IMG/VR virus record: IMGVR_UViG_3300032236_001850 | Location: 248,001 to 312,000 of that record | Length of the DNA: 64,000 bases | Reading direction: 5' to 3' (one strand) | Shown here: piece after piece, positions 354 through 61,488 of the stretch | Numbering within the stretch: position 1 is the first letter of the stretch | Layout of the letters: each line of letters starts with the position of its first letter | Position numbers and translations under genes: made by a program | The notes under the pieces: generated by a model | Database searches by the model: none | Seen by the model: only the letters and a program-made list of their open reading frames with translations | Told to the model about the DNA's origin: nothing

Positions 354-361
354 GATATATA
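354..361 (+). promoter_or_regulatory. Putative late promoter GATATATA
   Basis: Recurrent motif, about 25 nt upstream of ATG 386. Confidence 0.6.
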
Positions 362-385
362 CATTAAAAATTATACGTCATAAAT

Positions 386-1882
386 ATGAAAAGAGTATTA
401 GATTTTAGTGGATATAGCAAAATATTCGAAGCAGATACACCACCTGCACCTGCACCAGCGGGAGGAGCAACACCAGCTCCAACAACAGGAACAACACCTG
501 CACCAGCGGGAGGAGCAACACAAGCTCCAGCAACGGGAACAACACCTGCACCAGCGGGAGGAGCAACACCTGCACCAGCAGGCGATAAAAAAGAAGCTGC
601 TCCTGATAAAAAAGATGCCACTCCAGATAAAGCAAAATCATCCAATGCGCCAACAGCTGCCACATCAGTTGGGGATCAGCTATATAATGCTTTTATTGAC
701 ATATATTTCATATTAGTTTCAGGTATAGATGGGGGATATCCAGACGTGGTTGCTGATCTTCAAAGTGTTTCACAACAAACAGATGCAACTAAAAAAGGTG
801 ATGCAATGGCAGATGCTCTTAATAAGGTTTCGCAAAAATTAAATGCTGATTATAAATCACAAATAGGTGGAGATGTTAAAGGATTTAGCGACGATCTTAA
901 AAAAGCATACACTACACTTGTTACTTCTGACGAGGGTAAAAAATCATTGGATGGTATTAACAAGAGAATAGACGATTCGATTAATAAATATGTAACTGAA
1001 CTTGCTGCTGAGCTTAAAAAAGCAAAAGCACCTATTAAGGAATCATTCCAAGCTTGGAGAGAATCTGAACAATTAAACGAGGGATTATTTGATAAAAATC
1101 TATTTCCAGAAAGAAGACAAGAATTACTTAGCACCATAATAACTCCTAAAATGTCGCAATTTAAAACGATTGCTGACACCACGATGGATAGCGCTTACAA
1201 GCAAGCTGCTCAAACAGCATATGATGCAATGAGTAAGTTATCTGATGAATTATCCAAGGATGACACTTGGGACAAAATGAAGAGAAGAGAAAGAAAGGAT
1301 AGATTAGAAGCTATTCCTGGTGATGTTGATAAGATACAATCTGCAATGAATGATGCTACAACTAAATTTACTGCTCAACTTAAGATAGACAAGGATGTGA
1401 CTGATAGTCTTAAATCAGTTGATGATAAAGCTAAAGACATCAAATCAAAAGCAACGGAACTTGTTAATAAACAAGCTGCTGCTGAAGCTAAGAAAAAAGA
1501 AGAGGAAGAAAAGAAAAAAGGTGGTGATAAAAAAGAGGAAGATAAAAACGCTCCTAAAGAAATAAAATCGGGTAATATAGATAAAGATAATCTTAAGAAA
1601 ACTGGATCTAATTATCAAGCAATTAAAGACTTCCAAGGAAAACTTAATACAATTCTACCAGATAATCAGCAGATAAAAGCTGACGGTGGTTACGGTAAAA
1701 ATACAGAAGAAGCAATTAGAAGGGTTGCTAGACTTATAGGCGGTTCAACTGGTGAAGATCTAGTTAAGAGCACGGACGATGGTAAAAAACTAACACCAGA
1801 ATTCCAAACAATGGTTGCTAATTGGATAGATCCAAAGGTGCAGGCAAAAATGAAAGATCTAGTAAGCGGAAAGACATCATAA
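386..1882 (+). CDS. Putative internal virion protein with capsid-targeting-like N-terminus, Pro/Ala/Thr/Gly repeats, helical core and C-terminal peptidoglycan-binding-like domain
   Basis: N-terminus MKRVLDFSGYSKIFE|AD; C-terminal LKKTGSNYQAIKDFQGKLN...IKADGGYGKNTEEAIRR resembles PG_binding_1 (L..G......V..lQ..L.......DG.fG..T..A). Confidence 0.55.
   Translation: MKRVLDFSGYSKIFEADTPPAPAPAGGATPAPTTGTTPAPAGGATQAPATGTTPAPAGGATPAPAGDKKEAAPDKKDATPDKAKSSNAPTAATSVGDQLYNAFIDIYFILVSGIDGGYPDVVADLQSVSQQTDATKKGDAMADALNKVSQKLNADYKSQIGGDVKGFSDDLKKAYTTLVTSDEGKKSLDGINKRIDDSINKYVTELAAELKKAKAPIKESFQAWRESEQLNEGLFDKNLFPERRQELLSTIITPKMSQFKTIADTTMDSAYKQAAQTAYDAMSKLSDELSKDDTWDKMKRRERKDRLEAIPGDVDKIQSAMNDATTKFTAQLKIDKDVTDSLKSVDDKAKDIKSKATELVNKQAAAEAKKKEEEEKKKGGDKKEEDKNAPKEIKSGNIDKDNLKKTGSNYQAIKDFQGKLNTILPDNQQIKADGGYGKNTEEAIRRVARLIGGSTGEDLVKSTDDGKKLTPEFQTMVANWIDPKVQAKMKDLVSGKTS
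449..585 (+). repeat. Coding tandem repeat, about 48-bp period (PAPAGGATPAPTTGTT / PAPAGGATQAPATGTT / PAPAGGAT / PAPAG)
   Basis: cctgcaccagcgggaggagcaacac occurs three times. Confidence 0.9.
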
Positions 1883-2616
1883 TGGAAATTAAAAAATTCA
1901 GTGAATTTTCTGTTCTTCAAAGGGTATACGAAAAAAACGGAGACCCGGTTGAGCAGAACACACCAACAAAGACTGGCATAAAATATAGGGATAATATAAA
2001 TCTCCCAACCGAAGATACCGGAGACGACTCAGCGGGGCTATATACTATATTTCTAACACAAGCTTCATCTGTTATCAGTAGCATGTCAGATAATGTTGCA
2101 CCCATCAATCCAGATAAAGGGACTAAAGCAAGTAAAGACATAGCTGAATTAATAAAAAATCTGAAACCAACATATGAATCTCACAAGAATTTATGGAGTG
2201 AAATAGAAAAAATAAGTGACTATGTTGGCGGTGATTGGCAAAATATAAGCAAGGGGGAATTATCATCATTACATGCCTTTGATCCACAAGGAAATGTTTT
2301 GGGTACCTTTAAGCAGAATATGAAGAATCTTGATACTAGACTTAAATCAAAGGATATTACAGATTCACAATATGCAGACGAAGCTAAAAATCTTAGGATT
2401 GAAGCGAATAATAACCTGGATAGCTCAAGATCATTATACTATATGAAAATAGGTGAGGCTCTAGATTATTATATGCAGGCAACCAAGGTTTTTAAACAAG
2501 GAGCACTTTTATGCTTACAAAATATGGAATCTGAAGCAAAAGAAAATCCATCATCAGGAAAAAATTATCTGAATATTATAACGGAAAGTGCAAAAAACAT
2601 ACTAGGTCATAATTAA
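1882..2616 (+). CDS. Hypothetical protein, capsid-targeting-like N-terminus (start probably 1882, not 1822)
   Basis: TAATG stop-start overlap with upstream gene; MEIKKFSEFSVLQRVYE|KN. Confidence 0.65.
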   Translation: MEIKKFSEFSVLQRVYEKNGDPVEQNTPTKTGIKYRDNINLPTEDTGDDSAGLYTIFLTQASSVISSMSDNVAPINPDKGTKASKDIAELIKNLKPTYESHKNLWSEIEKISDYVGGDWQNISKGELSSLHAFDPQGNVLGTFKQNMKNLDTRLKSKDITDSQYADEAKNLRIEANNNLDSSRSLYYMKIGEALDYYMQATKVFKQGALLCLQNMESEAKENPSSGKNYLNIITESAKNILGHN

Positions 2617-3645
2617 ATGTCAAACATATCAAATAAAATAGTAAATGAAAGCTTTGGTTCTTGGCTTAATCAGGCAAGACAATGGGCAAGTGGTGTTGGT
2701 CAGGGTGCATTGAGTGGAACTGTATTTGACAAGGGAGACAAACAGGACTATAATGCACGAGTTCAGGATCAATTACAAAGAGCTGAAATATTACAAAGCG
2801 CAATTTTTGATGCAGGAAACACTATAGATAGTGTTCTTAATAGTCTAGAAGGCACAGATCTACAGAAAAAAGCAAAAAATGCTGCTTCTGATATGATATC
2901 ATTTCTACAGCAATCAATAAAAACTGTACAATCCATAATAAGCGAGGGAGGTCAGGGTGATATGACCAATAAATCTAGCTATGCAAATAATGGAGGATTG
3001 GATCCGGGTAGAAAAAAACAACTCGATGACGTTGCTGCAGGACTGGATAGAATCACTCAAAGAAGTGGGAGCAGCAAAGGCTATGAGAATAGTCCACTGG
3101 ATACATGGTGTAGAGAATTCTTAGGTAAACATAACGAGAACTTTGAATCCAACGAATATCTTTCAACGGGAAATTCACTTGTTGCTAAAGCACAATCCAT
3201 TATCAACGAAATAAGAAATGCAGCAGAGGTAGATAGAAAAATAGCAGAAAAAGACGTTGATAAGGTTATATCCAAAGGATTAAAACAGCTACAAAGATTT
3301 ATAGGTGGTAAAAGTGATACACAAGCAATATTAGTACCTAAACCAGGAAGTCAATTAGAGGAATTAATTAATAGGAATTCAAATAAGCCACAATCAGCAG
3401 CGGTACAGAAATTCAGAGAAGACCTAAGAAAACTCAACATTCAAACTTCAACCGAAGATGTTTGGTCAGAGAAGGACGATCCTTGTGCAGAAGAAGCTGC
3501 AACAGTCGTTAGTGCTATAACTAAGAAAAAATATGAACCTAAAGAAAAGGAGGGATTTAAAGAGTTACAGAGAGACGTTAAAACACTTGTGAAAAATCAA
3601 CCAAAGATAAAGGAGATATTAACACAAAAACCACCGAAAATTTAG
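2617..3645 (+). CDS. Hypothetical helical protein, possible internal virion protein
   Basis: Abuts previous stop; MSNISNKIVNE|SF resembles a prohead-protease site. Confidence 0.6.
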   Translation: MSNISNKIVNESFGSWLNQARQWASGVGQGALSGTVFDKGDKQDYNARVQDQLQRAEILQSAIFDAGNTIDSVLNSLEGTDLQKKAKNAASDMISFLQQSIKTVQSIISEGGQGDMTNKSSYANNGGLDPGRKKQLDDVAAGLDRITQRSGSSKGYENSPLDTWCREFLGKHNENFESNEYLSTGNSLVAKAQSIINEIRNAAEVDRKIAEKDVDKVISKGLKQLQRFIGGKSDTQAILVPKPGSQLEELINRNSNKPQSAAVQKFREDLRKLNIQTSTEDVWSEKDDPCAEEAATVVSAITKKKYEPKEKEGFKELQRDVKTLVKNQPKIKEILTQKPPKI

Positions 3646-3703
3646 GGTCCGTTAAAGTTTCGTTAAATAGTTAAAAAACCGAAACCAAAACGAAAAAACA
3701 CTG

Positions 3704-3850
3704 TAAGATAATTATCTTAATTTTCCCCCTGGTGAAGAATCTATTACTTATCTAATACATCTTAGAGCCCAAACTTTATTTTAAATAGATAAACATACCC
3801 CAATCTTAGACCCAGATTTTTAAATATAATAAAGATCCCCTAATCTTAAT
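3704..3850. repeat. 16-bp palindrome plus imperfect 40-44 bp tandem repeats in a non-coding gap
   Basis: TAAGATAATTATCTTA at 3704-3719; ATCTTA(G/A) units starting 3759, 3803 and 3843. Confidence 0.6.
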
Positions 3851-3918
3851 AATTCATTTAAAAAAGAAACAAAACACAAGATTTTCCATATTATAATAGA
3901 TAAAAATATTAATGTAAT

Positions 3919-9991: not shown

Positions 9992-9999
9992 AATATATA
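9992..9999 (+). promoter_or_regulatory. Putative late promoter (AATATATA variant)
   Basis: Motif upstream of TTG 10015. Confidence 0.5.
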
Positions 10000-12682: not shown

Positions 12683-12690
12683 GATATATA
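12683..12690 (+). promoter_or_regulatory. Putative late promoter GATATATA
   Basis: About 20 nt upstream of ATG 12710. Confidence 0.6.
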
Positions 12691-17857: not shown

Positions 17858-17865
17858 GATATATA
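17858..17865 (+). promoter_or_regulatory. Putative late promoter GATATATA
   Basis: About 30 nt upstream of sheath ATG 17895. Confidence 0.6.
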
Positions 17866-22492: not shown

Positions 22493-22525
22493 GTGGTATG
22501 TTATATAGAATAAAATTAATTTTTT

Positions 22526-23811: not shown

Positions 23812-23819
23812 AATATATA
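23812..23819 (+). promoter_or_regulatory. Putative late promoter (AATATATA)
   Basis: Upstream of ATG 23832. Confidence 0.45.
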
Positions 23820-25435: not shown

Positions 25436-25466
25436 TTTTTTATCCCGTATTTTTAATTTATATTTG
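25436..25466 (+). promoter_or_regulatory. Putative early promoter, Bacteroidota-type TAnnTTTG
   Basis: TTTTTTATCCCG then TATATTTG at 25459-25466, upstream of dCMP deaminase and ECF sigma. Confidence 0.6.
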
Positions 25467-26044: not shown

Positions 26045-26713
26045 ATGCAAGGAAAAGAAAAAAATATACAAAAATTAGCAAGTGAATTTATAAAACATAG
26101 AAATGACAGATCCTTTAGAAATCTATTTGAAAGATTAAAACCTGGTATATTAAATCATTGTTTTTTAATAGTAAAAGATCCTTCTCTTGCGGAGGATGCT
26201 TTTTTGAACACCATGTCAAAGATCTGGCAAAAGATAGATCAATATAATGACGAGAGAGGTAATTTTTCAACCTGGTGTTACAACATAGCAAGGAATGAAA
26301 CTTTACTTCTAATGAAGGAGGAAAAGAAGTATAATGCAAGAACAAGTCTGGAGATGGAATTTTTCTCTTCTAATAATGAAGTAGGTGATATTGGTGGAAC
26401 CTACAGCATGGAGGAGGATCAGACAAATTCTTTTTTCAACGAAACAAGTAAATTTGATGAAATATATGGTTCTGTTATAGATGAAATAGAAGGACTTCCG
26501 GATCTTTATAAGAATATTATGATTGATAGGGAGATCAATAATATGAAATATAAAGATATAGCTGAAAAATATGATTTAAAGAAAAGATCAGTAGCAACAA
26601 GAATTAGAAGGGCTAGAAGCAAAATTACAAAGAATGTTGGTACGGAAGCTGTTGAAATTATAACAGGTAAAAGCAGAAACGTTACGAGAAATTCAACATC
26701 AAAGAAACTTTAA
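26045..26713 (+). CDS. ECF-type sigma70 factor
   Basis: Region 2 AEDAF...IWQKIDQY...FSTWCYNIARN; region 4 LPD...KYKDIAEKYDL...VATRIRRAR. Confidence 0.88.
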   Translation: MQGKEKNIQKLASEFIKHRNDRSFRNLFERLKPGILNHCFLIVKDPSLAEDAFLNTMSKIWQKIDQYNDERGNFSTWCYNIARNETLLLMKEEKKYNARTSLEMEFFSSNNEVGDIGGTYSMEEDQTNSFFNETSKFDEIYGSVIDEIEGLPDLYKNIMIDREINNMKYKDIAEKYDLKKRSVATRIRRARSKITKNVGTEAVEIITGKSRNVTRNSTSKKL

Positions 26714-28634: not shown

Positions 28635-28642
28635 GATATATA
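28635..28642 (+). promoter_or_regulatory. Putative late promoter GATATATA
   Basis: Upstream of ATG 28669. Confidence 0.55.
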
Positions 28643-30746: not shown

Positions 30747-30798
30747 CAAAATATTTTGTTTAGTAAATATATAGTAAAAAGTTTCTTGTCCTTGTATG

Positions 30799-30806
30799 GA
30801 TATATA
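30799..30806 (+). promoter_or_regulatory. Putative late promoter GATATATA (second copy AATATATA at 30766)
   Basis: About 22 nt upstream of ATG 30829. Confidence 0.6.
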
Positions 30807-33402: not shown

Positions 33403-33560
33403 GCCGCAACTTCTATTTCGCTCCTAAGGGCGAGAATCAGGATAAACCTGGACAACCATTCGTTCAATCGATGAAGGGAAAATTCGCTAAAGCACCCACG
33501 GGTAAGGACACCAATCCCAAGGATGAGGAGGAAGATGATTCAGGCGAAAAGAAACAATAA
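33399..33560 (+). CDS. Putative -1 frameshift extension of the 857-aa protein (53 aa)
   Basis: -1 frame reads LSRNFYFAPKGENQDKPGQPFVQSMKGKFAKAPTGKDTNPKDEEEDDSGEKKQ*, continuing the KAP motifs. Confidence 0.55.
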   Translation, partial: LSRNFYFAPKGENQDKPGQPFVQSMKGKFAKAPTGKDTNPKDEEEDDSGEKKQ

Positions 33561-33566
33561 TTTATA

Positions 33567-33600
33567 AGAATGTAGTATTTTTTACTACATTCTTTTTTTA
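33567..33600 (+). terminator. Intrinsic terminator
   Basis: AAGAATGTAGTA-ttttt-TACTACATTCTT plus T-run, placed just after the -1 frame stop. Confidence 0.8.
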
Positions 33601-33605
33601 TGAAT

Positions 33606-33633
33606 GAAATCTTTTAGCATTTAGCAACTAAAA
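33606..33633 (+). promoter_or_regulatory. Putative middle promoter GAAAT...AACTAAAA upstream of gp55-like gene
   Basis: Shared motif class. Confidence 0.45.
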
Positions 33634-33664
33634 TACTAAATACCCAAATATAACCCAAATATTA

Positions 33665-34024
33665 ATGGCAAAAGTTTATGTAAAGAATAGTGAACTCATG
33701 GCAGCAGTGATTGAATCAAAAAATGCTGGAAAATTGACACCCGAAACTATAGAGATGTTCAATCTTATGATTGAAGGTATATCTAAGAAGATGTCATACA
33801 AAGATCCTGAGGATAAAGAGGATTGTATGGCTTTTGCCATGGAAGATCTTTGTAAATATTGGAATAGATTCAATCCAGAAAAATCAAATAATCCATTTGC
33901 TTATTTTACTCAGATAGCAAAACACGGATTTGCTAAGGGATGGAAAAAATTACATCCACCAAAAAATCCAGTAACGATACCATTTAGTTATATTACTGGT
34001 GATGATAATTCATATAACGTATAG
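33665..34024 (+). CDS. gp55: Minimal late sigma factor (T4 gp55-like)
   Basis: RFNPEKSNNPFAYFTQIA matches the gp55 FDP.KS.NPFAYFTQ signature; only 119 aa. Confidence 0.8.
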   Translation: MAKVYVKNSELMAAVIESKNAGKLTPETIEMFNLMIEGISKKMSYKDPEDKEDCMAFAMEDLCKYWNRFNPEKSNNPFAYFTQIAKHGFAKGWKKLHPPKNPVTIPFSYITGDDNSYNV

Positions 34025-34523: not shown

Positions 34524-34531
34524 GATATATA
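34524..34531 (+). promoter_or_regulatory. Putative late promoter GATATATA
   Basis: About 20 nt upstream of portal ATG 34552. Confidence 0.6.
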
Positions 34532-37880: not shown

Positions 37881-37910
37881 TTTTTTATCCGAATAATTTT
37901 ATTAAATTTG
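37881..37910 (+). promoter_or_regulatory. Putative early promoter, Bacteroidota-type TAnnTTTG
   Basis: TTTTTTATCCG then TAAATTTG at 37903-37910, upstream of ligase. Confidence 0.6.
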
Positions 37911-41915: not shown

Positions 41916-42338
41916 ATGGAACTTTTTGATATAGTAAAAAATATATTCTCAAAAAATCAAAGAATCTGGGATTCCGTAGGAAAAAACGACAAGACTCGTA
42001 ATTTTTTTATGATCAACAGAATAATGGCTATACAGTTTCCTGTACAAGCAAACCAATTCAACAAAATGAGGGTTACTCCACATTTTGTTGTCGATTGGTG
42101 GAGAAACACATTATCTAATAGATTTTCAAAACCACCAACCTGGATATACACGAAAACAATAAAGAAAGAAACTGTAAATAAAAAAACAAAAACATCAGAT
42201 TATAGCGAAGTTGAAAATTTTATTTGTGATAAATATAAGATATCCAAGAGGGATCTTCTGCAAATAAAGGAATTCTATCCCGATAGATATAATGCCTGGA
42301 TGATTGACGTTGCAGATCAGTTAGGTTTAAAAAAATAG
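41916..42338 (+). CDS. Probable clamp loader small subunit (T4 gp62-like)
   Basis: FMINRIMA...ANQFN...W..K...ICDKYKIS resembles gp62 (FIINR.LS...ANEMN...KW.K...EYYGYS). Confidence 0.5.
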   Translation: MELFDIVKNIFSKNQRIWDSVGKNDKTRNFFMINRIMAIQFPVQANQFNKMRVTPHFVVDWWRNTLSNRFSKPPTWIYTKTIKKETVNKKTKTSDYSEVENFICDKYKISKRDLLQIKEFYPDRYNAWMIDVADQLGLKK

Positions 42339-42349
42339 ATATATAGAGG

Positions 42350-44335: not shown

Positions 44336-44363
44336 TTATTTCCGTAATTATTGATTATATTTG
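44336..44363 (+). promoter_or_regulatory. Putative early promoter, Bacteroidota-type TAnnTTTG
   Basis: TTATTTCCG then TATATTTG at 44356-44363, upstream of the 3'-5' exonuclease. Confidence 0.55.
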
Positions 44364-45095: not shown

Positions 45096-45132
45096 AAAGC
45101 TTTCCTTGGATATATAAAGGAAAGCTTTTTTT
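45096..45132 (+). terminator. Terminator hairpin whose loop is the late promoter motif
   Basis: AAAGCTTTCCTT-GGATATATA-AAGGAAAGCTTT plus T-run. Confidence 0.7.
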
Positions 45133-45948
45133 GTGGACAAAATATTCAATTTTAATTTATTTATAGAAAATGATGGTGACTCAATTTTTGAAAAGAAAGT
45201 TGGAGCATTCTATCATGATGAATTAAATCCAATTTTCTGGAAAAAGAAAAAGGATAAAAATGGAAATATCGAATGGGTATTCGATCAGCGAGTTAGAAGA
45301 AAACTTTTAAGAATAGCTAACGATTTCTATGAAAAATACTCCGAATTGTTAAAAGGAAGAGTAATAAAGGACATCCAACTAACCGGATCCTTATCTAATT
45401 ATAACTACACTAATTTCTCTGATCTTGATGTACATATCATTGTAAATCTTGATGGTATAGATGACGAGAATCCAAAAATACTTAAGACTGCCATTGATGG
45501 TATAAGATTTGTCTGGAATCTTAGACATAATATATCAATTAGAGGATATGACACCGAACTATATCTTCAGAGTGAGGATGAACCACATGACTCATCCGGT
45601 CTTTTCTCACTATTAAATAATGAATGGATAAAGACACCAGTATTTTCACCGCCTGTAGTGGATGAGATGGATGTGAATAAAAAGTATGGATCCATAGTTT
45701 TTGAGATAGACAAATTACAAACGAAATTAAGAGATCTTTCGGATCTTCCAAGTAATGCCAAGTCTTTATACAAAAGATGTATTAAACTTAAAGATAAGAT
45801 CCAAAAAATGAGGAAAGAAAGCCTTTCTAGAGACGGTGAGATGTCAATTGGTAATCTTGTATTTAAAAAGCTAAGAAATGAGGGATATATAGAAAAATTA
45901 ATAGATACCATATCTAAATCTTACGATAAAATTTACACTGAAAAATAA
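45133..45948 (+). CDS. Pol-beta-superfamily nucleotidyltransferase with capsid-targeting-like N-terminus
   Basis: LTGSLSNYNYTNFSDLDVHI (GS...DxD) and GYDTELY; N-terminus MDKIFNFNLFIE|ND (GTG start). Confidence 0.7.
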   Translation: MDKIFNFNLFIENDGDSIFEKKVGAFYHDELNPIFWKKKKDKNGNIEWVFDQRVRRKLLRIANDFYEKYSELLKGRVIKDIQLTGSLSNYNYTNFSDLDVHIIVNLDGIDDENPKILKTAIDGIRFVWNLRHNISIRGYDTELYLQSEDEPHDSSGLFSLLNNEWIKTPVFSPPVVDEMDVNKKYGSIVFEIDKLQTKLRDLSDLPSNAKSLYKRCIKLKDKIQKMRKESLSRDGEMSIGNLVFKKLRNEGYIEKLIDTISKSYDKIYTEK

Positions 45949-48740: not shown

Positions 48741-48777
48741 TTCAATAAAAAATCGAAAAAATACAGATATATCCGTT

Positions 48778-48785
48778 GATATATA
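48778..48785 (+). promoter_or_regulatory. Putative late promoter GATATATA
   Basis: Upstream of ATG 48799/48808. Confidence 0.6.
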
Positions 48786-48798
48786 AGTAACATAAAAT

Positions 48799-50763
48799 AT
48801 GTACAAAATGCCAACAACTAAAAAATTAAACGAAGAATTAGTTTTCATTCTAGAAAGACAATCATCCGTTCTTGAATCTTCAAGAAACGATAATGATGAT
48901 TATGTCCTTGAAGGTATTGCTGCTGTTTTCGGTAAAGAGAACAACAATAATAGAATATATGAAGAAGCTGAATATCTTCCTCACTTAAACTATCTTAATG
49001 AGAAAATAGCTCAGAGAAGATTGGTTGGAGAATTGGATCATCCTGAAAAATTTGACGTTTCTCTTAAAAACATTTCCCATATAATCGAAAAACTTGATTA
49101 TGATAAAAATGGAAGAGAAATTAAAATTAAAGTTAGACTTTTAGATACACCAATGGGTCAGATAGCTAAAAATCTTGTTGATGCAGGAGTTCCTCTTTCT
49201 ATTTCTTCCAGAGCAGCTGGTTCTGTTGGTAATGATAAAAAAGTTCAAATTAAAAAAATATTCACATATGACCTAGTTGCTGATCCTGGTTTTCAAGACG
49301 CACAACTAGAAAGAGTATATGAAAGCGCTGGTTATCATTTTAGTGATTTCTTCGAAATGAGAAATAAAAGTGTAACTAACGATCTACTTTGTGTAAATGA
49401 ATCATTAGGTCTAAAAAATGATTCAGATGTGAAGATATATAAAGTTGAAAATAACGAAGAATTTAATAACCTCGTATCAAAATCAGATAAAAATAAGACG
49501 ATCCTCATGGAGAATAATGAATTTGTGACTGCAGAAGAATTAAACCAATATTCTGTTTTCTTGAAAAAAGAGATGGAAGCAATGAATTCTAAAATTGCAG
49601 AAATTAAAGAACAAAAGCAAGTATTAACTGAATCTAGCTTTGAAGATAAAAATTCAAACCTTGAAGAAAGAGTTGCTAAATTAGAAAAATATTCTGAGTA
49701 TTTAGCTGAGAATTTAGATAATGCTATTAAGTATGGTGAATACCTTGCTGAAAACTTAGACGAGAGTATAAGTTATAGCAAATATTTAGCTGAAAACTTA
49801 GATAAGAATATTTCTTATTCTAAATATCTTGCTGAAAATGTTGACAAATCAATTTCTTATACTGAGTACGTTGCTGAATCAACAGATAAAGGTATAGAGT
49901 ACACTAAATATCTTGCTGAGAAATTAGATCAGAACATTCAATACTCTGAGTACTTAGCAGAAAACTTAGACAAAGGTATTTCTTATTCTGAATATCTTGG
50001 TGAGAACTTAGACAAAGGTATAGCTTACTCTGAGTACCTAGCAGAAAAATTAAATGATGGTATCGAGTATTCCGAATACCTTGCAGAGAATCTTAACAAG
50101 AATATCCAATATTCCGATTACCTAGCAGAAAATGTTAATAAAGGTTTAGATTATTCTGATTACTTAGCAGAAAAATTGAAAAAATCAATCTCTTACAGTG
50201 AATATATAGCTGAGACAGTTAATACAACTAAATACAAAGCTACTGACTCATTAAGAGAAAGTGTAGATCTTTCAGCTTCAGCAGGATTAAATGAATCAGG
50301 ATTTGCTGGAGATTATACAGATCTTACAACAAGAATAGATAGTTTGATAGAATCAGTTAAAACACAAAAAACTGAGTCAAATATAAATGAAGCTTCTAAA
50401 TCAATGAAGCAAACAGCCAACACACAAAAGGCAGACGAAGTTCTTAACGAAAATGAGAACAAAAACAAAACAGGTCTTAATTTTATTGACACAATGCCTG
50501 AAGAATACACACAAGTTTGGGAATCACTTACTGAAGGACACAAGCAATCAATTATTGCTCAAAGTAACTTCTATAGATTAGATACACCTTACCAAGTGAA
50601 AAACTTCTGGTCAACACGTCAATTAGGAACTGCACCAGTTGGAGTTCAAAAATTAGACGAGAGCGAAAATATCGCAATGCCTAATGCACAAACAAGCGGT
50701 TATTCTAACGAATATATGAACGCTATTGCTGCTGCATTAGAGAAAAAATTTCAAACAAGATAA
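48799..50763 (+). CDS. gp21: Prohead protease (T4 gp21-like) fused to scaffold/core domain
   Basis: NNNNRIY, GELDHP, ISHII, LDTPMG, SSRAAG, TYDLVADPG; C-terminal coiled-coil repeats. Confidence 0.9.
   Translation: MYKMPTTKKLNEELVFILERQSSVLESSRNDNDDYVLEGIAAVFGKENNNNRIYEEAEYLPHLNYLNEKIAQRRLVGELDHPEKFDVSLKNISHIIEKLDYDKNGREIKIKVRLLDTPMGQIAKNLVDAGVPLSISSRAAGSVGNDKKVQIKKIFTYDLVADPGFQDAQLERVYESAGYHFSDFFEMRNKSVTNDLLCVNESLGLKNDSDVKIYKVENNEEFNNLVSKSDKNKTILMENNEFVTAEELNQYSVFLKKEMEAMNSKIAEIKEQKQVLTESSFEDKNSNLEERVAKLEKYSEYLAENLDNAIKYGEYLAENLDESISYSKYLAENLDKNISYSKYLAENVDKSISYTEYVAESTDKGIEYTKYLAEKLDQNIQYSEYLAENLDKGISYSEYLGENLDKGIAYSEYLAEKLNDGIEYSEYLAENLNKNIQYSDYLAENVNKGLDYSDYLAEKLKKSISYSEYIAETVNTTKYKATDSLRESVDLSASAGLNESGFAGDYTDLTTRIDSLIESVKTQKTESNINEASKSMKQTANTQKADEVLNENENKNKTGLNFIDTMPEEYTQVWESLTEGHKQSIIAQSNFYRLDTPYQVKNFWSTRQLGTAPVGVQKLDESENIAMPNAQTSGYSNEYMNAIAAALEKKFQTR
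49690..50235 (+). repeat. 13 tandem 42-bp (14-aa) coding repeats, consensus YSEYLAENLDK.I.
   Basis: Counted directly in the translation. Confidence 0.9.
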
Positions 50764-50780
50764 AAAAAAGTAAATAAATC

Positions 50781-52505
50781 ATGAAATTGATTAACGAACA
50801 AGAAATCTACGATACATGGTCACCGCTTATCGAGAGCAAAGCTGGTATCACAGATGAAGGAAAAAAAGGGTGGTTAACTAAATATTGCCACTATCACTCA
50901 TTAAACGAGTCTGCTGGTGCTTATAACACTTTAGGTGTTGTAAATGGTATGGGTAACGTTGCTCCTCCTGCATTCCCAGGAATGAATATGGGTGGTACAA
51001 CATTATCTACACAAGCTAATGCTGGTTTCTACAACACACAATGGCAAGGTTCAGGTGATAAATTCCCATCATTATTACCTTTAGCAATTCAAGTTGCTGC
51101 AAAAACTATCGGTTTCGACATCGTTCCGGTTATCCCTATGTCAGGTCCAACTGGTATCTTATCATACTTGGATTATGTTTATGCTGGTGGTAAAATTGCT
51201 GCTGCTGCTGGTACTGATGCTGCTTCTCAGTTAGCTAGTGCCCCATCAATGATCAAATTCCCAGTTTATCAGTCATCTACTGGTGCTACTGGTGCTACTG
51301 GTGCTACTGCAGGTACATTTACAGCTGGTGCTACTGGTAACATTGGAACATTAAACTTAACATTCATAGGTCTTTCTAGAATTGATGGTTTCCCAATCTT
51401 CCAAGTAACTGGTATGGCTGCTGGTTCTAACATTGCTAGCTATATTAACGGTACTCCTACTGTACTTACTAACTTTGGTTCTAGTGGTTTCTATACTGGT
51501 GCTACATATTCTAGTAACGGTTATACAGCTCAATTAGTTAAAGCTTTAGAGGATCACATCCAAGGTTTCTCTGGTGCTGGTTTTAATAATACTGATGCTT
51601 GGCAAGGTCCTTACGTTGATGGTACTAAAACTTACAATCCTATGTTAAGAGGTGTTGGTGAGTCTACTTACTTCAACTCAATGGGTCTTTCGACTTTCAC
51701 TAAATTCGTTGAAGCTGAGACATTCCAAGTAGCTGCTTCTGTTACAACAGAGCAAATACAAGACCTTAACAAACAATTCGGTATCGATGTTATTTCAATG
51801 ATCGAGAACGCATTGGTTAATGAGGTATCTCAAGCTATTAACAAACACATCTTAGCAAGAGCATTTGCTTTAGGTTGGTCAAATCACGTTTTATTCAACA
51901 GTGTTGAAAACCAAAACTTGAACTTAAACCTTGTGATCAACGGTTCTGCTGGTACAACATTCTCTTACATCAACAAAATTGATGCTAACGTTGCAATGGC
52001 AATTCCAGCTGGTCCTGCTTCAGGCGGTTATGAGAACTTATCAACTCTTCAAAGAAGATTATTCTCAAGAATCCTTGCAGCTGCAAACGTAGTAGCTAAC
52101 AGAGGTAGAAGAGGTCCTGCTAACTTCATCGTTACTAACGCTGCTGTAGCAAGTGCACTTCAAGATATCTCTCAGTTCACTTTCGCTCCATTCTCTAACA
52201 CATTAACTCAAAACAATGGTACTTTATACCCTGTAGGTTCTCTTGCTGGTATGACTGTTTACGTTGATCAGAATATGCAGTATTCTGATACGAGAGTATT
52301 AGTTGGAAGAAAAGGTGGTGATGATGAACCAGGATTAAAATTCATGCCTTACATGATGGCAGAGTCTATTCAGACAATCTCTGAAGGTACTATGTCACCT
52401 AAGATCGCAGTTAAATCTAGATATGCTTTAGTAGAAGCTGGTTTCTTACCAGAAACTATGTACTTAACATTCTTTGTTAACGTACCTGCTGGTGGTTTAG
52501 CATAA
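50781..52505 (+). CDS. gp23: Major capsid protein (T4 gp23-like)
   Basis: W.PLIE, LNE|SAG propeptide, VIPMSGPTG, QDL..QFGID, RGRRGPANF, MPY, KSRY. Confidence 0.95.
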   Translation: MKLINEQEIYDTWSPLIESKAGITDEGKKGWLTKYCHYHSLNESAGAYNTLGVVNGMGNVAPPAFPGMNMGGTTLSTQANAGFYNTQWQGSGDKFPSLLPLAIQVAAKTIGFDIVPVIPMSGPTGILSYLDYVYAGGKIAAAAGTDAASQLASAPSMIKFPVYQSSTGATGATGATAGTFTAGATGNIGTLNLTFIGLSRIDGFPIFQVTGMAAGSNIASYINGTPTVLTNFGSSGFYTGATYSSNGYTAQLVKALEDHIQGFSGAGFNNTDAWQGPYVDGTKTYNPMLRGVGESTYFNSMGLSTFTKFVEAETFQVAASVTTEQIQDLNKQFGIDVISMIENALVNEVSQAINKHILARAFALGWSNHVLFNSVENQNLNLNLVINGSAGTTFSYINKIDANVAMAIPAGPASGGYENLSTLQRRLFSRILAAANVVANRGRRGPANFIVTNAAVASALQDISQFTFAPFSNTLTQNNGTLYPVGSLAGMTVYVDQNMQYSDTRVLVGRKGGDDEPGLKFMPYMMAESIQTISEGTMSPKIAVKSRYALVEAGFLPETMYLTFFVNVPAGGLA

Positions 52506-52527
52506 TCTTAGGATTAACAAATATATC

Positions 52528-52557
52528 AAAAGTCCCGGATATACCGGGACTTTTTTT
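52528..52557 (+). terminator. Intrinsic terminator
   Basis: AAAAGTCCCGG-atata-CCGGGACTTTT plus T-run. Confidence 0.85.
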
Positions 52558-52590
52558 ATGACCTGAACTTAAATAAAAAATCTCTGTTGG

Positions 52591-52598
52591 GATATATA
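52591..52598 (+). promoter_or_regulatory. Putative late promoter GATATATA
   Basis: About 22 nt upstream of ATG 52621. Confidence 0.6.
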
Positions 52599-52620
52599 GA
52601 TGATAAAAATAAATCAATTT

Positions 52621-53775
52621 ATGAAATGTATTCCATCTTTTGAGGATTTTGAAGAATATGAGGGTCTTATCGAAAATCTAGATCCTTCGCTACTTAAAGA
52701 ATTAAGATCCATAGAAATACCAGAATTAGAATCTCCTATAAACGAGGGAAGAATAGCAAATTTTCTAACAAATAAACTTTCCAGATTCCTTCTTGGATCA
52801 TTTTCTGGTGTTGGTATGATAGATGAAGCTATTAGAGCAATTCTTTCAATTGAACTTGATCTTATAAGAAAAAATAGTGATTTCAAAAAAGTTATAGCTA
52901 AGTATGATGATCAAATAGATCAACTTGCTAAAGAAGGAAATAAAGATAAAATCTCTGCAGTTTCAAAGGAAAGAGAAGCTAAAACTAACGAGTTTGATGC
53001 ATATGAAAAAGCTCAGAATCTTAAACTTAAGAAAGCTAAAGAGCTAGCTAAACATATTGTTAATGGTAATGCGAGAAGAAAAGAATATATTGAGTCTTGC
53101 TATGCTGAAAATGAAATAGAAATGGCTGAACTTGAATATAAATTAGCTAAGGAGAGATCCGAGGATCAGACAGCATTAAAAGCTTATGAGGAAAGAATAG
53201 CTAAAGCTAAGGAAGAAGCAGAAGCTAAAGCTAAGGAAATAGAAGATCAGATGAAGGATGCAGAGGAGAACGAACCAAAAGAATCCAAATCCGATGTTTC
53301 TATGGATGTGGAGAAGGAGAAAAAGGTTATTTCTAGAAAAAGAGGTGGTGACGTGATTAAAAGAAAAAATGAATTGGAGAAGGAAATAGCTGATATTAAA
53401 TCCGACATGGAAAGAAAGCTAAATCAAATATCCAATAAAATTAAAAAGTCTCAAAAGCCTTTAACTGAAAGATATCTTGAAAACGCTAAGCTTGATCTAA
53501 TAGAGATGGCTACAGCTTTGGATTATAAAAAAGAGCTTCTAACAACATTTAGAAATCTTGGCAAAAATGCAGCAGAAATCGAGAAGAAATTAGATAATAA
53601 TAAAGAATTCAAGGATGCTATTGAGAAAATCAATAGAGGTGCAGGTAATGCTAAACAAATCAAGGGTGAGGTATTAAAAGCATTTAGAGATGCTTTCTCG
53701 TCGGTTGGTATAGGTAAATCTGGGGTTTTAACCACAGAAATTATAGACAAACTTAAGGAAAAATTAAATAACTAA
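52621..53775 (+). CDS. Coiled-coil putative internal head protein, paralogue A (start 52621 preferred)
   Basis: MKCIPSFEDFEEYEGLIE...INE|GR. Confidence 0.6.
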   Translation: MKCIPSFEDFEEYEGLIENLDPSLLKELRSIEIPELESPINEGRIANFLTNKLSRFLLGSFSGVGMIDEAIRAILSIELDLIRKNSDFKKVIAKYDDQIDQLAKEGNKDKISAVSKEREAKTNEFDAYEKAQNLKLKKAKELAKHIVNGNARRKEYIESCYAENEIEMAELEYKLAKERSEDQTALKAYEERIAKAKEEAEAKAKEIEDQMKDAEENEPKESKSDVSMDVEKEKKVISRKRGGDVIKRKNELEKEIADIKSDMERKLNQISNKIKKSQKPLTERYLENAKLDLIEMATALDYKKELLTTFRNLGKNAAEIEKKLDNNKEFKDAIEKINRGAGNAKQIKGEVLKAFRDAFSSVGIGKSGVLTTEIIDKLKEKLNN

Positions 53776-53777
53776 TC

Positions 53778-54680
53778 ATGACTTTAAAATTTAAGGAGTG
53801 GGATCAGCTTAATGAAGCTAGCTTAATCGATAAAGTAAAAAATTGGTTTAGTAGTAAATTTGGTGGTCCGGTGGGCAAGATTGACGACCTTATAGAGGAG
53901 TACAAGTCCGCGGAAAGTGACTATGTTGATGAATGGGAAAAATTACAATCCGAACTTGATAAGCTTGACCTAGAAAAAGGACAAACTAAAAGCGATCCTG
54001 CTGAATTAAAAAGAATTGAAAAATTCATAGATAAGAATACTCATGCACTCGAAGCTGGTGAAAAAGCACACGCTAAGAGAATAGATCTTTTGATGGCTAA
54101 GGTTAAACAAGAAATCAATGGTGACACAAAACTCAAGAAGTATTGGGAATTCAATAAAACAAAAGTTGATGCTGAAATTGCAGAGGACATGTATAAGAGA
54201 GCTAAAAATTTAGCGGATGCAACTTTAGGTAAATCCCTCTATAATAAATACAAAGCAACAGTACTTAGAGCAAAAGAAAAAGATGCTGAATTTAGAAAAC
54301 TGTATGGTGATCTAATAAATGGTACCGGAAGAGACAGGGAAAATGAACCAAATTCAAAAGTACCAGGTGGAGGATCTACAGGTTTAAGTGATTCTCAGAT
54401 GGAGCAATTCCTAAACATGTCAATAACCGAATTTGCCAAGGAGGTAAGAACAATGGAAAAAGGTGATATAAGAGAACTTGTTTCTTTTCTTATAAGAAAA
54501 AGAAATGATCTTTATGTGCAAATGGACACTGAAAGAGATGCACTCAATGAATTGATTGCTAAGAAACAAGGTGCAGGTGCAACCAAAGAAAGCGCAGCAG
54601 CTAAGCTTAAAGAAATCCGTGAAAAATACATGGACAAGATTAGAGATCTTAGAGGAAAAATAACAATAGTTAGAAGATGA
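53778..54680 (+). CDS. Coiled-coil putative internal head protein, paralogue B
   Basis: MTLKFKEWDQLNE|AS. Confidence 0.6.
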   Translation: MTLKFKEWDQLNEASLIDKVKNWFSSKFGGPVGKIDDLIEEYKSAESDYVDEWEKLQSELDKLDLEKGQTKSDPAELKRIEKFIDKNTHALEAGEKAHAKRIDLLMAKVKQEINGDTKLKKYWEFNKTKVDAEIAEDMYKRAKNLADATLGKSLYNKYKATVLRAKEKDAEFRKLYGDLINGTGRDRENEPNSKVPGGGSTGLSDSQMEQFLNMSITEFAKEVRTMEKGDIRELVSFLIRKRNDLYVQMDTERDALNELIAKKQGAGATKESAAAKLKEIREKYMDKIRDLRGKITIVRR

Positions 54681-57595: not shown

Positions 57596-57623
57596 GAAAT
57601 CAAATTAATTTTTGCATCTATAA
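57596..57623 (+). promoter_or_regulatory. Putative middle promoter GAAAT...ATCTATAA
   Basis: Shared motif class upstream of kinase 57629. Confidence 0.45.
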
Positions 57624-57628
57624 TATTT

Positions 57629-58183: not shown

Positions 58184-58193
58184 ATAGAAATAT

Positions 58194-59600: not shown

Positions 59601-59624
59601 TCTTTATTAATCTGAATCTTCTTG

Positions 59625-59632
59625 GATATATA
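59625..59632 (+). promoter_or_regulatory. Putative late promoter GATATATA
   Basis: About 20 nt upstream of ATG 59652. Confidence 0.6.
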
Positions 59633-59651
59633 CATAAATAAAAATCTAAGA

Positions 59652-60302: not shown

Positions 60303-60317
60303 AATAAAAGATAAGCA

Positions 60318-60653: not shown

Positions 60654-60667
60654 TCGAATGCAATTAT

Positions 60668-60699
60668 AAAAAAAAGAGAGCATCTGCTCTCTTTTTTTA
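60668..60699. terminator. Bidirectional terminator between convergent genes
   Basis: A-run GAGAGCA-tc-TGCTCTC T-run. Confidence 0.8.
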
Positions 60700-61422
60700 T
60701 GTGATTGTTTCTATAAATTTTTCTTTTGCTAGTTTGTAGATATCAGAATCTTCATCGAAATCCTCATATATTTCTATAACAAAAAGTTCAGGAGATACGT
60801 TTTTTTCTATTGAAAATTCTTCCAGAATCTCGTGGTATATGAATTCATAATTCATCGAGTATCTTGAATTTTTCAAATTTATCCTTTTTAGAACACATAT
60901 TTGTTTGTTACCGTGCTCAGTTTTCATTGTAACTGCACCTTGCCAGTAGTATGGTATGATTTTATCCGTTACCATGTTTCTTATGATGAGTATACCAGAA
61001 TTAGCTGGTTCCTTCTTCTCCGCATTGAATTTAGATTGAACCTTAAATATTTTGATCTTAGATTCCTCATCCTTTAGCATATCCAAAAATATTTCTGAAT
61101 ATTCATAGAGTGTTTCTAGGGATGATTCTATAATTGATTCGATGGTATCCCTTTTTTCTTTGCTTAGCTTTTTGAAATCGAAATTATTTATGTACTCTCT
61201 TTCCTCTTCGGTTAGCTGGGAAATTATAGTTTTTCCTATAGTGTTGTTTTTCTTAAATTCGTTAAGAGATTTAACTATCTTGGAAACAGCCCGTAATATT
61301 GGATAACAGTTTTTTGAATTTATATTTTTGCTTATAGATTTTAGGTAATCTAAAAGAACATATTCTTTATGTTCTGTGTCTATTGGTTCCTTAATAAACC
61401 AAATTGTGCTTAAATTTTTCAT
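60697..61422 (-). CDS. Hypothetical protein, the only credible minus-strand gene
   Basis: 241-aa ORF filling a gap with no + strand ORF; bidirectional terminator at its 3' end. Confidence 0.75.
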   Translation of the reverse strand: MKNLSTIWFIKEPIDTEHKEYVLLDYLKSISKNINSKNCYPILRAVSKIVKSLNEFKKNNTIGKTIISQLTEEEREYINNFDFKKLSKEKRDTIESIIESSLETLYEYSEIFLDMLKDEESKIKIFKVQSKFNAEKKEPANSGILIIRNMVTDKIIPYYWQGAVTMKTEHGNKQICVLKRINLKNSRYSMNYEFIYHEILEEFSIEKNVSPELFVIEIYEDFDEDSDIYKLAKEKFIETIT

Positions 61423-61449
61423 CTTTAACTTTTAAAAGTTGGATCCTAT

Positions 61450-61488
61450 TATATATTTACATTCTAATTTTTTCAAAATGGATATATA
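61450..61488. promoter_or_regulatory. Divergent late promoters
   Basis: AATATATA on the - strand (61450-61457) and GATATATA on the + strand (61481-61488). Confidence 0.5.

What the first reader, a model, noticed from the sequence alone, without database searches (positions are those of the whole stretch)
354..61488. Candidate late promoter (G/A)ATATATA at consistent spacing before structural genes
Seen: GATATATA at 354, 12683, 17858, 28635, 30799, 34524, 42338, 45109, 48778, 52591, 59625 and 61481. Variants occur at 9992, 22500, 23812 and 30766. Most lie about 12-30 nt upstream of a start codon, often right after a terminator; 42338 is only 5 nt from its ATG. The single minus-strand gene has the motif in reverse orientation (61450-61457). 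Known: T4 gp55 recognises a single -10 box, TATAAATA. Inference: this is the equivalent box for the 119-aa gp55-like factor.
Basis: partly seen in the sequence, partly recalled or inferred. Interest (0 to 1): 0.6.

Follow-up and report, generated by a model that had tools for sequence, protein, structure and literature searches.

The report
Late-type promoter box of a huge phage
GATATATA is a real, oriented and conserved signal upstream of genes in a 434-kb phage that probably infects Bacteroidota; it is most likely this lineage's version of the phage T4 late promoter box, read by a very small (119-aa) gp55-type sigma factor.

Summary
All 12 listed GATATATA copies are present, with three more (45884, 49434, 63409), and all 15 lie on the + strand (6.2 expected over both strands). 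The window belongs to a complete 434.5-kb phage genome. GATATATA is the most enriched 8-mer upstream of its genes: 92 copies, 74 intergenic, 66 sense in upstream spacers against 3.5 expected. It is strongly under-represented inside coding DNA. There is no -35 element. An A follows 4 nt downstream in 84% of sites. The gap to the ATG is either exactly 4 nt (14 sites, probably leaderless mRNAs) or 13-29 nt. Across 80 related contigs the count is 290 forward to 6 reverse, and the box stays before the same genes while the spacers diverge. In the window it heads the neck/terminase, sheath/tube, portal and protease/capsid units. Ligase/clamp-loader, dCMP-deaminase and exonuclease units carry a Bacteroidota-type TAnnTTTG box instead. 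The 119-aa protein is a true gp55 homologue (PHROG 2e-15; best fold match T4 gp55). Not shown: the transcription start, late timing, and which factor reads the box, since two other phage sigma factors exist. Elsewhere the box also precedes non-structural genes. Verdict: new variant of a known kind.

The parts
354..361 (+). GATATATA box. An A lies 5 nt downstream (366) and the ATG at 386 (498-aa protein, function unknown). It follows a hairpin plus T-run.
9992..9999 (+). AATATATA variant box before the 10015 gene (409 aa, unknown), after the SbcC-like gene.
12683..12690 (+). GATATATA box heading the neck-like (12710), 15206 and large-terminase (16006) unit. It follows a terminator-like hairpin.
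17858..17865 (+). GATATATA box heading the tail sheath (17895) and two tail-tube paralogues (21304, 21873).
22500..22507 (+). GTTATATA one-mismatch variant with the usual N4-A and A-rich leader, after a T-run, before 22526 (weak baseplate-hub match).
23812..23819 (+). AATATATA variant box before 23832 (524 aa, weak tape-measure-like matches).
28635..28642 (+). GATATATA box after a terminator-like hairpin, before four genes of unknown function (ATG 28669). Present in 10 of 10 distinct orthologous upstream regions.
30766..30806 (+). Tandem AATATATA (30766) and GATATATA (30799) before the 857-aa gene at 30829. GATATATA is present in 38 of 38 relatives at 21-24 nt.
33665..34024 (+). Gene for the 119-aa gp55-type sigma-like factor, the proposed reader of the box. 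Its own upstream region holds neither this box nor the early box.
34524..34531 (+). GATATATA box before two tandem portal genes (34552, 36191). RATATATA is present in 48 of 48 distinct relatives at 20-65 nt from the ATG.
42338..42345 (+). GATATATA box exactly 4 nt before ATG 42350 (178 aa, unknown): probable leaderless mRNA. RATATATA is present in 28 of 39 relatives, mostly at 4-6 nt.
45109..45116 (+). GATATATA box in the 9-nt loop of a perfect 12-bp hairpin followed by T7, between the exonuclease gene and the 45133 gene. Present in 18 of 18 relatives.
45884..45891 (+). GATATATA box inside the 3' end of the preceding gene, 65 nt before the 927-aa gene (45957). Present in 5 of 5 relatives.
48778..48785 (+). 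GATATATA box heading the prohead protease (48799) and major capsid protein (50781). RNA-library contigs of ~90% relatives cover 48821-52536 only.
52591..52598 (+). GATATATA box after the capsid-gene terminator hairpin. The probable start is ATG 52621 (coiled-coil protein, weak matches only).
59625..59632 (+). GATATATA box before ATG 59652 (unknown function).
61450..61488 (.). Divergent pair of boxes: AATATATA on the - strand (61457-61450) for the only minus-strand gene (60697-61422), and GATATATA on the + strand (61481) for ATG 61509.
49434..49441 (+). Intragenic GATATATA (protease gene) without the downstream A; probably a chance copy. The same applies to 63409-63416. AATATATA at 50201-50208 is also intragenic.
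25459..25466 (+). Contrast class: TATATTTG box with upstream T-run (Bacteroidota sigma-A type) heading the dCMP deaminase, 222-aa sigma and exonuclease unit. Sister boxes lie at 37903-37910 (ligase, clamp loader, GMP kinase, RNase H-like) and 44356-44363 (3'-5' exonuclease).
26045..26713 (+). Rival reader: 222-aa sigma factor with region 2 and region 4 (ECF-like).

Best explanation
GATATATA (G preferred, A tolerated at the first base) is the promoter element of the main phage-specific transcription class of this 434-kb, T4-related phage, whose host is inferred to be a member of the Bacteroidota. It acts alone, without a -35 element. It lies at about -12 to -5 relative to a start at the conserved A five bases downstream. 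That is the position of the host sigma-A '-7 box' in Bacteroidota and close to that of T4's TATAAATA (-13 to -6). Host RNA polymerase core is directed to it by the phage's 119-aa gp55 homologue, which consists of little more than a sigma region-2 domain. Transcripts either begin at the A of the ATG (leaderless; 14 sites) or carry short A-rich leaders of about 9-25 nt. By analogy with T4 and from the genes served (neck, terminase, sheath, tube, portal, protease, capsid), the class is late, or middle-to-late. Shown: the motif's reality, orientation, architecture, conservation and gene association, and the gp55 homology. Inferred: the start site, the timing and the identity of the reading factor.
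For: Statistics. It is the top 8-mer upstream of genes (65 of 92 copies within 60 nt of a start, 20-fold). 74 of 92 copies are intergenic, where 12.4% of the genome is. 66 sense copies lie in upstream spacers against 3.5 expected.
Architecture. There is no information upstream of the box (at most 0.14 bit per position), while an A follows N4 in 62 of 74 sites, then an A/T-rich tract. The same method does find a strong -33 T-run and a CGAAA element for the TAnnTTTG class.
Spacing. There is a sharp class at exactly 4 nt (14 sites against about 2 expected) and a broad class at 13-29 nt.
Avoidance. In coding DNA there are 7 sense copies against 26 expected and 1 antisense against 18. One-mismatch words such as GATATATT or GATATATG are not depleted.
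Conservation. In 80 loci with portal identity 66-97% the count is 290 forward to 6 reverse. The box is present before orthologues of 28669, 30829, portal A, 45133 and 45957 in 100% of distinct upstream regions. It is absent before the gp55-like, gp4, ligase, clamp-loader, cd and sigma-222 genes (0%) and nearly absent before portal B (1 of 53).
Gene class in the window. Units headed by the box whose first gene has a recognisable function are all structural. Units headed by TAnnTTTG are all DNA metabolism.
Factor. The 119-aa protein hits PHROG 234 'late sigma transcription factor' at 2e-15. Its only PDB sequence hit is T4 gp55. The AlphaFold model (pLDDT 85) best matches 7d7c_F, with TM 0.71 and rmsd 1.8 A. 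Of the T4 pocket residues, N13, F86, Y97 and T99 are identical (PMC7892883).
Comparative control. The same k-mer test returns ATAAATA as the top upstream 7-mer in cyanophage Syn1, Tenacibaculum phage pT24 and Lak-A1, and ATATATA in LR756500. No phage RNA polymerase was found.
Against: There are no 5'-end or time-course data. The RNA runs held only assembled contigs of ~90% relatives. The phage encodes two more sigma factors (222 aa and 300 aa). The box also precedes dCTPase, followed by the nrd genes, and a 177-aa gene followed by the topoisomerase gene, and many small genes at 120-230 kb, so 'late = structural' is too narrow. No gp33 or gp45-type clamp was detected. The protein lacks the HLH motif that T4 gp55 needs for open-complex formation (PMC7892883). 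Gene calls are from my own crude ORF caller. The relatives are not independent samples.
Confidence: 0.62

Rival explanations
1. The box is a promoter, but one of the other two phage sigma factors reads it (222-aa ECF-like, window 26045-26713; or the 300-aa sigma-70-like protein at genome 204386-205288), not the gp55 homologue.
For: Both genes exist and sit behind early-class boxes, so they are made before most box-headed genes could be. The gp55-like protein lacks the HLH motif and no gp33 or gp45 was found.
Against: The 222-aa sigma has a Pfam region-4 domain, and the 300-aa sigma aligns to a sigma-70-type PHROG profile over nearly its whole length. Such factors would be expected to use a -35 element. 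None is present at this class, although the method detects one for the TAnnTTTG class. The box is 6/8 identical, in register, to the T4-family late box. Gp55-bearing relatives (Syn1, pT24, Lak) show ATAAATA as their top upstream 7-mer.
Confidence: 0.17
2. The octamer acts at the RNA level, as an endonuclease processing site or a translation-enhancing element for mRNAs that lack Shine-Dalgarno sequences, rather than as a promoter.
For: It is oriented with genes, intergenic and close to start codons. Bacteroidota do not use Shine-Dalgarno sequences (PMC6847099).
Against: The distance to the ATG varies from 4 to 65 nt for the same gene across relatives. The box heads minus-strand blocks and divergent spacers, where there is no upstream transcript to process. 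It is purged most strongly from the antisense strand of genes (1 against 18), which an RNA signal would not explain.
Confidence: 0.06
3. It is the operator of a DNA-binding regulator (activator or repressor) that lies over promoters of another kind.
For: The ATATAT core is partly palindromic, and the motif is tightly fixed.
Against: Strict strand asymmetry (290:6). Fixed N4-A geometry and an exact 4-nt class before ATG. No other conserved promoter element lies nearby.
Confidence: 0.05
4. It is a chance product of AT-rich spacers.
For: The genome is 65% A+T, and RATATATA as a whole is not enriched in the window.
Against: There are 66 copies against 3.5 expected in dinucleotide-shuffled spacers. 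Orientation, conservation and coding avoidance also argue against chance.
Confidence: 0.01

Closest known systems
Phage T4 late promoters (TATAAATA at -13 to -6) read by gp55 with gp33 and the gp45 sliding clamp (PMC2988020, PMC7892883)
   Same: Both are a single 8-bp -10-type box with no -35, followed by an A/T-rich tract. The first position is variable. They match 6/8 in register. A gp55 homologue is encoded in the genome. The box heads structural-gene units and occurs on either strand.
   Different: The consensus has G/A at position 1 and T instead of A at the fifth base (T4 -9). The inferred position is one base closer to the start. The gp55 homologue is 119 aa, with no HLH motif. No gp33 or gp45 homologue was detected. 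There is a class of probably leaderless transcripts.
In-silico late boxes of other T4-like phages (KVP40, 44RR, S-PM2; Aeh1 with a/gC at -13/-12; PMC2988020). Cyanophage Syn1, Lak-A1 and pT24 were analysed here.
   Same: The same kind of inference, and the same behaviour in my k-mer test: the box is the top 7-mer upstream of genes.
   Different: Those lineages keep ATAAATA. This clade and LR756500 use ATATATA.
Bacteroidota sigma-A promoters: -7 box TAnnTTTG at -12 to -5, plus a -33 element (PMC9723704)
   Same: The inferred position relative to the start is the same (-12 to -5). Leaders are short and lack Shine-Dalgarno sequences.
   Different: The sequence is different and there is no -33 element. 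In this phage the sigma-A-type boxes form a separate class of about 90 sites, concentrated at 10-230 kb.
Huge Bacteroidota phages: LR756500 (462 kb) and other huge-phage genomes (PMC7162821), and the Lak megaphages of Prevotella
   Same: The portals are the closest matches (44% and 34-37% identity) and the gp55 homologues are 45-50% identical. All have a compact gp55.
   Different: The searches I ran found no description of this box. I did not read what the huge-phage papers say about promoters, so this is not a check of them. Lak appears to keep the T4-type ATAAATA.

Membership tests
T4-type late transcription (gp55-dependent promoters) | The genome encodes a gp55-family sigma-like factor | tested here: met
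   PHROG 234 at E 2e-15. The only PDB sequence hit is T4 gp55, E 2.5e-4. The AF2 model best matches 7d7c_F, TM 0.71. Annotated cyanophage gp55 proteins are 30-36% identical.
T4-type late transcription (gp55-dependent promoters) | The promoter is a single -10-type octamer without a -35 element | tested here: met
   No upstream position exceeds 0.14 bit across 74 sites. The control class shows clear upstream elements with the same method.
T4-type late transcription (gp55-dependent promoters) | Consensus TATAAATA | tested here: not met
   The consensus is GATATATA (6/8 in register). GATAAATA and TATAAATA are not enriched upstream. It is a variant consensus.
T4-type late transcription (gp55-dependent promoters) | The box lies at -13 to -6 from a mapped start | not testable with these tools
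   No raw RNA reads were available. The conserved A and the exact N4-ATG class imply -12 to -5.
T4-type late transcription (gp55-dependent promoters) | It serves virion and assembly genes and is expressed late | tested here: inconclusive
   In the window every recognisable structural unit is headed by the box. Elsewhere the box also precedes the dCTPase, nrd and topoisomerase genes and many small genes. Timing was not measurable.
T4-type late transcription (gp55-dependent promoters) | gp33 co-activator | tested here: not met
   phrog_254 gave no hit. PF16805 gave only a spurious 11.7-bit hit containing a stop codon. phmmer with T4 gp33 found nothing.
T4-type late transcription (gp55-dependent promoters) | gp45 sliding clamp as activator, with a clamp-binding tail on gp55 | tested here: inconclusive
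   No hit with phrog_223, PF09116, PF02916, PF02768, T4 gp45 or Syn1 gp45. A gp44 clamp-loader homologue is present. The conserved tail TIPFSY resembles the T4 motif SLDFLY; this is resemblance only.
T4-type late transcription (gp55-dependent promoters) | gp55 HLH motif (from T4 R114 onward) that stabilises the template strand | tested here: not met
   The alignment ends at T4 residue ~113. The remaining 23 residues are modelled as a low-confidence tail (pLDDT ~57). The length of 119 aa is invariant in 70+ relatives.
Bacteroidota sigma-A promoters | -7 box TAnnTTTG with a -33 element | tested here: not met
   The GATATATA sites lack both elements. TAnnTTTG sites form a separate class.

The most novel reading that the evidence does not exclude
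A 119-aa protein that is essentially a bare sigma region-2 domain, with no HLH motif, no gp33 partner and no recognisable T4-type clamp, is sufficient to direct Bacteroidota RNA polymerase to a single octamer at -12 to -5. That octamer would be potent enough on its own for the genome to have purged it from coding DNA on both strands. This would be the smallest working sigma-like specificity factor, with a retargeted base preference (A to T at the T4 -9 position) whose structural basis is unknown.
Probability: 0.3. Interest if true: 0.7.

Novelty: new variant of a known kind. Interest (0 to 1): 0.5.

Why it matters
Huge phages of uncultivated hosts are known almost only as gene lists. Here a regulatory map can be read from sequence alone. 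About 90 host-type early promoters are concentrated in the left half of the genome. About 90-110 box-type promoters serve the virion genes and much else. A probable leaderless class exists as well. The map gives transcription-unit boundaries for annotating this widespread freshwater and wastewater clade. It also gives a testable sigma-promoter pair for Bacteroidota genetics. The natural contrast between ATATATA and ATAAATA lineages could be used to find how gp55-type factors read the base at T4 position -9.

Tried and rejected
1. Co-variation idea, rejected. T4 H95 lines the -9 pocket and is F here, while the -9 base changes from A to T. But cyanophage Syn1 gp55 also has F and uses ATAAATA.
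2. RNA evidence. The one run search found only Logan contigs holding 5-6% of the words. Laid on 48001-53900, contigs of ~90% relatives cover 48821-52536. This fits the protease-capsid unit but cannot show a start, and sequence divergence or DNA carry-over could explain it.
3. A third promoter class, GAAA-N19-TAnAAT, is conserved before the gp55-like gene and within the portal leader of relatives. It is not clearly enriched genome-wide, so it is left unexplained.
4. Megablast of 12 kb against the phage collection found no match.
5. My own terminator scan is noisy: it makes more calls on the - strand than on the + strand. I used it only for individual hairpins, which I checked by folding.
6. A search for an extended -10 'TG' found only a weak T/G preference at -2/-1.
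7. PHROG annotation of 10 box-headed and 10 early-headed genes outside the window returned mostly unknowns. It showed only that none of the early-headed genes is structural, and that one box-headed gene has a weak match to tail-fibre families.
8. For ORF calling in the Lak-A1 locus only, TAG was read through, following the published recoding of Lak phages (from my own knowledge). No alternative code was used for the window.
9. The large protein searches were not needed and were not run.

Full report
Context. The window is bases 248001-312000 of a single 434,509-bp virus record with direct terminal repeats, rated complete. The genome is 35% G+C, and about 90% of roughly 550 ORF-called genes are on the + strand. 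It is a distant T4 relative. It has a Portal_T4 portal, sheath, tube, prohead protease, gp23-like capsid protein, large terminase, gp4, UvsX, gp41, gp46/47, gp44, gp32, gp43 and others. Its closest public genomes are the 462-kb huge phage LR756500 (portal 44% identical), other huge-phage records and the Prevotella Lak megaphages at 34-37%. IMG/VR holds at least 80 related contigs with portals 66-97% identical. Start codons lack Shine-Dalgarno sequences. The second most enriched upstream 8-mer is TATATTTG, which matches the Bacteroidota sigma-A -7 box TAnnTTTG (PMC9723704, PMC6847099). The host is therefore very probably a member of the Bacteroidota. This is an inference.

The observation. All 12 listed GATATATA sites exist, with three unlisted ones, and all 15 are on the + strand. 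The expectation was 6.2 over both strands, and no shuffle of 100 reached 15. The listed variants are AATATATA (9992, 23812, 30766) and GTTATATA (22500). The minus-strand copy at 61450-61457 faces the only minus-strand gene. Taken loosely, RATATATA is not enriched in the window. The signal lies in the G form and in where the copies sit.

More than chance. Genome-wide there are 92 copies. Of these, 74 are intergenic, although spacers make up only 12.4% of the genome, and nearly all point at a start codon less than 30 nt away. That includes the 27 copies on the - strand, which precede minus-strand genes. GATATATA is the most enriched 8-mer in the 60 nt before genes, at 20-fold. I shuffled the spacers themselves, preserving dinucleotides. 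The oriented count is 66 against 3.5 +/- 1.8 for the genome and 9 against 0.54 for the window. Among one-mismatch words only AATATATA is clearly intergenic (21 of 43).

Anatomy. Aligning the 74 intergenic sites shows no information upstream (at most 0.14 bit). An A stands at the fifth base after the box in 62 of 74 sites, followed by an A/T-rich, G/C-poor tract. As a control, the same treatment of the 128 intergenic TAnnTTTG sites reveals a T-run at the -33 position, a CGAAA element, and a consensus of roughly ATTTTTTTAtcCGaA-N8-TATATTTGCAT. So the lack of a -35 in the GATATATA class is meaningful. The gap from the box to the first ATG that opens an ORF of at least 40 codons is bimodal: exactly 4 nt at 14 sites, and 13-29 nt at about 55 sites. 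In the 4-nt class the A of the ATG is the conserved A. The simplest reading is that transcription starts at that A. The box then occupies -12 to -5, the place of the sigma-A -7 box in Flavobacterium (PMC9723704), and one base closer to the start than T4's -13 to -6 (PMC2988020). The two intragenic GATATATA copies in the window (49434, 63409) lack this A.

Avoidance. Inside genes (ends trimmed, codon-shuffle expectation) GATATATA occurs 7 times in sense against 26 +/- 5 expected, and once in antisense against 18 +/- 4. All nATATATA words are depleted, whereas GATATATT, GATATATG, GATATAAA, GATTTATA and T4's TATAAATA are not, or only mildly. Purging from the non-transcribed orientation fits a DNA signal that works on its own. 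It does not fit an RNA signal. Some general avoidance of (TA)n repeats cannot be excluded.

Conservation. In the 80 related loci (1.37 Mb, oriented by the portal gene) there are 290 forward and 6 reverse copies. I counted distinct upstream sequences gene by gene. The box precedes the orthologues of 28669 (10/10), 30829 (38/38), portal A (48/48), 45133 (18/18) and 45957 (5/5), and 42350 in 28/39. It is absent before the gp55-like gene (0/46), gp4 (0/48), ligase (0/43; TAnnTTTG in 37), clamp loader (0/48), dCMP deaminase (0/25) and the 222-aa sigma (0/36), and nearly absent before portal B (1/53). Before the portal gene the box is retained while its distance to the ATG ranges from 20 to 65 nt and the flanks differ. 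In LR756500, ATATATA is again the top upstream 7-mer.

Genes served. In the window, boxes head these units: neck-like, 15206 and terminase; sheath and two tube genes; a hub-like gene (variant box); a tape-measure-like gene (variant); two tandem portals; prohead protease and capsid protein; and several units of unknown function. The dCMP deaminase / 222-aa sigma / exonuclease unit, the ligase / clamp loader / GMP kinase / RNase H-like unit and a 3'-5' exonuclease each carry a high-scoring early-type box instead. Early-type boxes number about 90; 80 of them lie between 10 and 230 kb, before small genes (median 129 aa, against 210 aa for box-headed genes). The picture is not purely structural versus replication, however. 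A GATATATA stands 61 nt before the dCTPase gene, which the nrd genes follow, and another stands before a 177-aa gene followed by the topoisomerase gene. About 50 more serve small genes at 120-230 kb. UvsX-gp41-gp47-gp46, gp32, gp61, gp43 and the gp55-like gene itself carry neither box. From my own knowledge, T4-like cyanophages that lack MotA/AsiA also place late-type boxes before replication genes, so this does not contradict a gp55 class.

The factor. The 119-aa ORF (33665-34024) matches PHROG 234 'late sigma transcription factor' (2e-15) over profile positions 8-110 of 181. Its only PDB sequence hit is T4 gp55, and annotated cyanophage gp55 proteins are 30-36% identical. An AlphaFold model built from 22 clade sequences (pLDDT 85) has four helices and a floppy tail. 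Its best PDB match is gp55 in the T4 open complex (7d7c_F; TM 0.71, rmsd 1.8 A), followed by sigma region-2 domains. Of the seven T4 pocket residues that hold the flipped -12, -9 and -8 bases (PMC7892883), N13, F86, Y97 and T99 are identical, L54 and R57 are conservatively replaced, and H95 is F. A-12 and A-8 correspond to box positions 2 and 6, which are A here as well. The protein stops where T4's HLH motif begins. Its length of 119 aa is fixed in more than 70 relatives. Comparably short forms occur in LR756500, Lak-A1 and the cultured Tenacibaculum phage pT24, where the 119-aa protein is annotated as hypothetical. The conserved tail TIPFSY resembles T4's clamp-binding SLDFLY; this is resemblance only. 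Neither gp33 nor a gp45-type or beta-type clamp was found with six profiles and two protein queries, although a gp44 homologue is present. No phage RNA polymerase was detected. The T7-type search had no positive control.

Comparative control. The same upstream k-mer test returns ATAAATA, the T4-family late box, as the top 7-mer in cyanophage Syn1 (13 forward, 1 reverse), in pT24 and in Lak-A1. It returns ATATATA in LR756500. In every gp55-bearing lineage I examined, the leading upstream word is a late-box-type heptamer. This clade and LR756500 differ at one base, T4 position -9. This is the best available link between the box and gp55. It also disposed of my H95-to-F co-variation idea, because Syn1 has F too.

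Rivals. Two other sigma factors exist: a 222-aa protein with regions 2 and 4, and a 300-aa sigma-70-like protein. Both lie behind early-type boxes. Such factors would be expected to use a -35 element, and this class has none, so they are less likely readers, but only biochemistry can exclude them. An RNA-level role (processing or translation) fits poorly with the variable distance to the ATG, with boxes at the heads of divergent and minus-strand units, and with the antisense purging. A dimeric regulator fits poorly with the 290:6 strand asymmetry.

RNA data. Contigs of ~90% relatives cover 48821-52536. That is the unit between the 48778 box and the hairpin after the capsid gene; the flanks carry only a few short pieces. 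This is compatible with the model but proves nothing about starts or timing.

Verdict. I found no description of this consensus in the paper library. It is a new variant of the T4-type late promoter, paired with an unusually small gp55.

Noticed in passing
window 34552-36186 and 36191-37843: Two tandem portal (gp20-type) paralogues. Both are present in all 80 related loci, and only the first is preceded by the box.
   Followed up: partly
window 25459-25466, 37903-37910, 44356-44363; genome-wide about 90 sites: A second promoter class with a long consensus (T-run, CGAAA, TATATTTGCAT) of Bacteroidota sigma-A type. It is concentrated at 10-230 kb and, together with the lack of Shine-Dalgarno sequences, points to a Bacteroidota host.
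   Followed up: yes
window 33560-33664; related loci upstream of the gp55-like gene and of the portal gene: After a terminator hairpin, relatives conserve a T-run, (T)GAAAT, about 19 nt, then ACTA(A/G)AAT before the gp55-like gene. A similar CGAAAT...CTAGAATA pair lies between the GATATATA box and the portal ATG in most relatives. This may be a third promoter class, but it is not clearly enriched genome-wide.
   Followed up: partly
window 45096-45135: The 45109 box lies in the 9-nt loop of a perfect 12-bp hairpin followed by seven T's: a terminator with a promoter box in its loop. The box is conserved in 18 of 18 relatives.
   Followed up: partly
genome 18384, 93968, 127970, 130689, 131910, 170614, 175532, 200206, 212651 and others (outside the window): Most genes in the exact N4-ATG (probably leaderless) class open with a shared N-terminus of the type M-[KR]-x-I-K-x-F-x-E-L-F. 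This suggests a paralogous family expressed from the box.
   Followed up: no
genome 204386-205288 (-) and window 26045-26713: Two further phage sigma factors (300 aa sigma-70-like; 222 aa with regions 2 and 4), both placed behind early-type boxes. This suggests a sigma cascade.
   Followed up: partly
L113 (Tenacibaculum phage pT24) 19971-20330; L112 (Lak-A1) 20001-20288: Comparably short gp55 homologues (119 aa in pT24, about 128 aa in Lak-A1) occur in other Bacteroidota phages, and in pT24 the protein is annotated only as hypothetical. These phages keep the T4-type ATAAATA word upstream of genes.
   Followed up: partly
whole genome, coding regions: All nATATATA words are strongly depleted in coding DNA in both orientations (TATATATA 0 against 42 expected). 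One-mismatch words are not depleted.
   Followed up: yes
genome about 211-228 kb (outside the window): Spacers here contain tRNA-like sequence (T-loop GTTCGAAT), which indicates a tRNA gene cluster. I did not scan it.
   Followed up: no
window 3646-3918 and genome 366335-366572, 379060-379128: The UvsX-helicase-SbcCD unit, gp32 and the gp43-like gene have long upstream spacers with neither promoter class. Their promoters are unidentified.
   Followed up: partly
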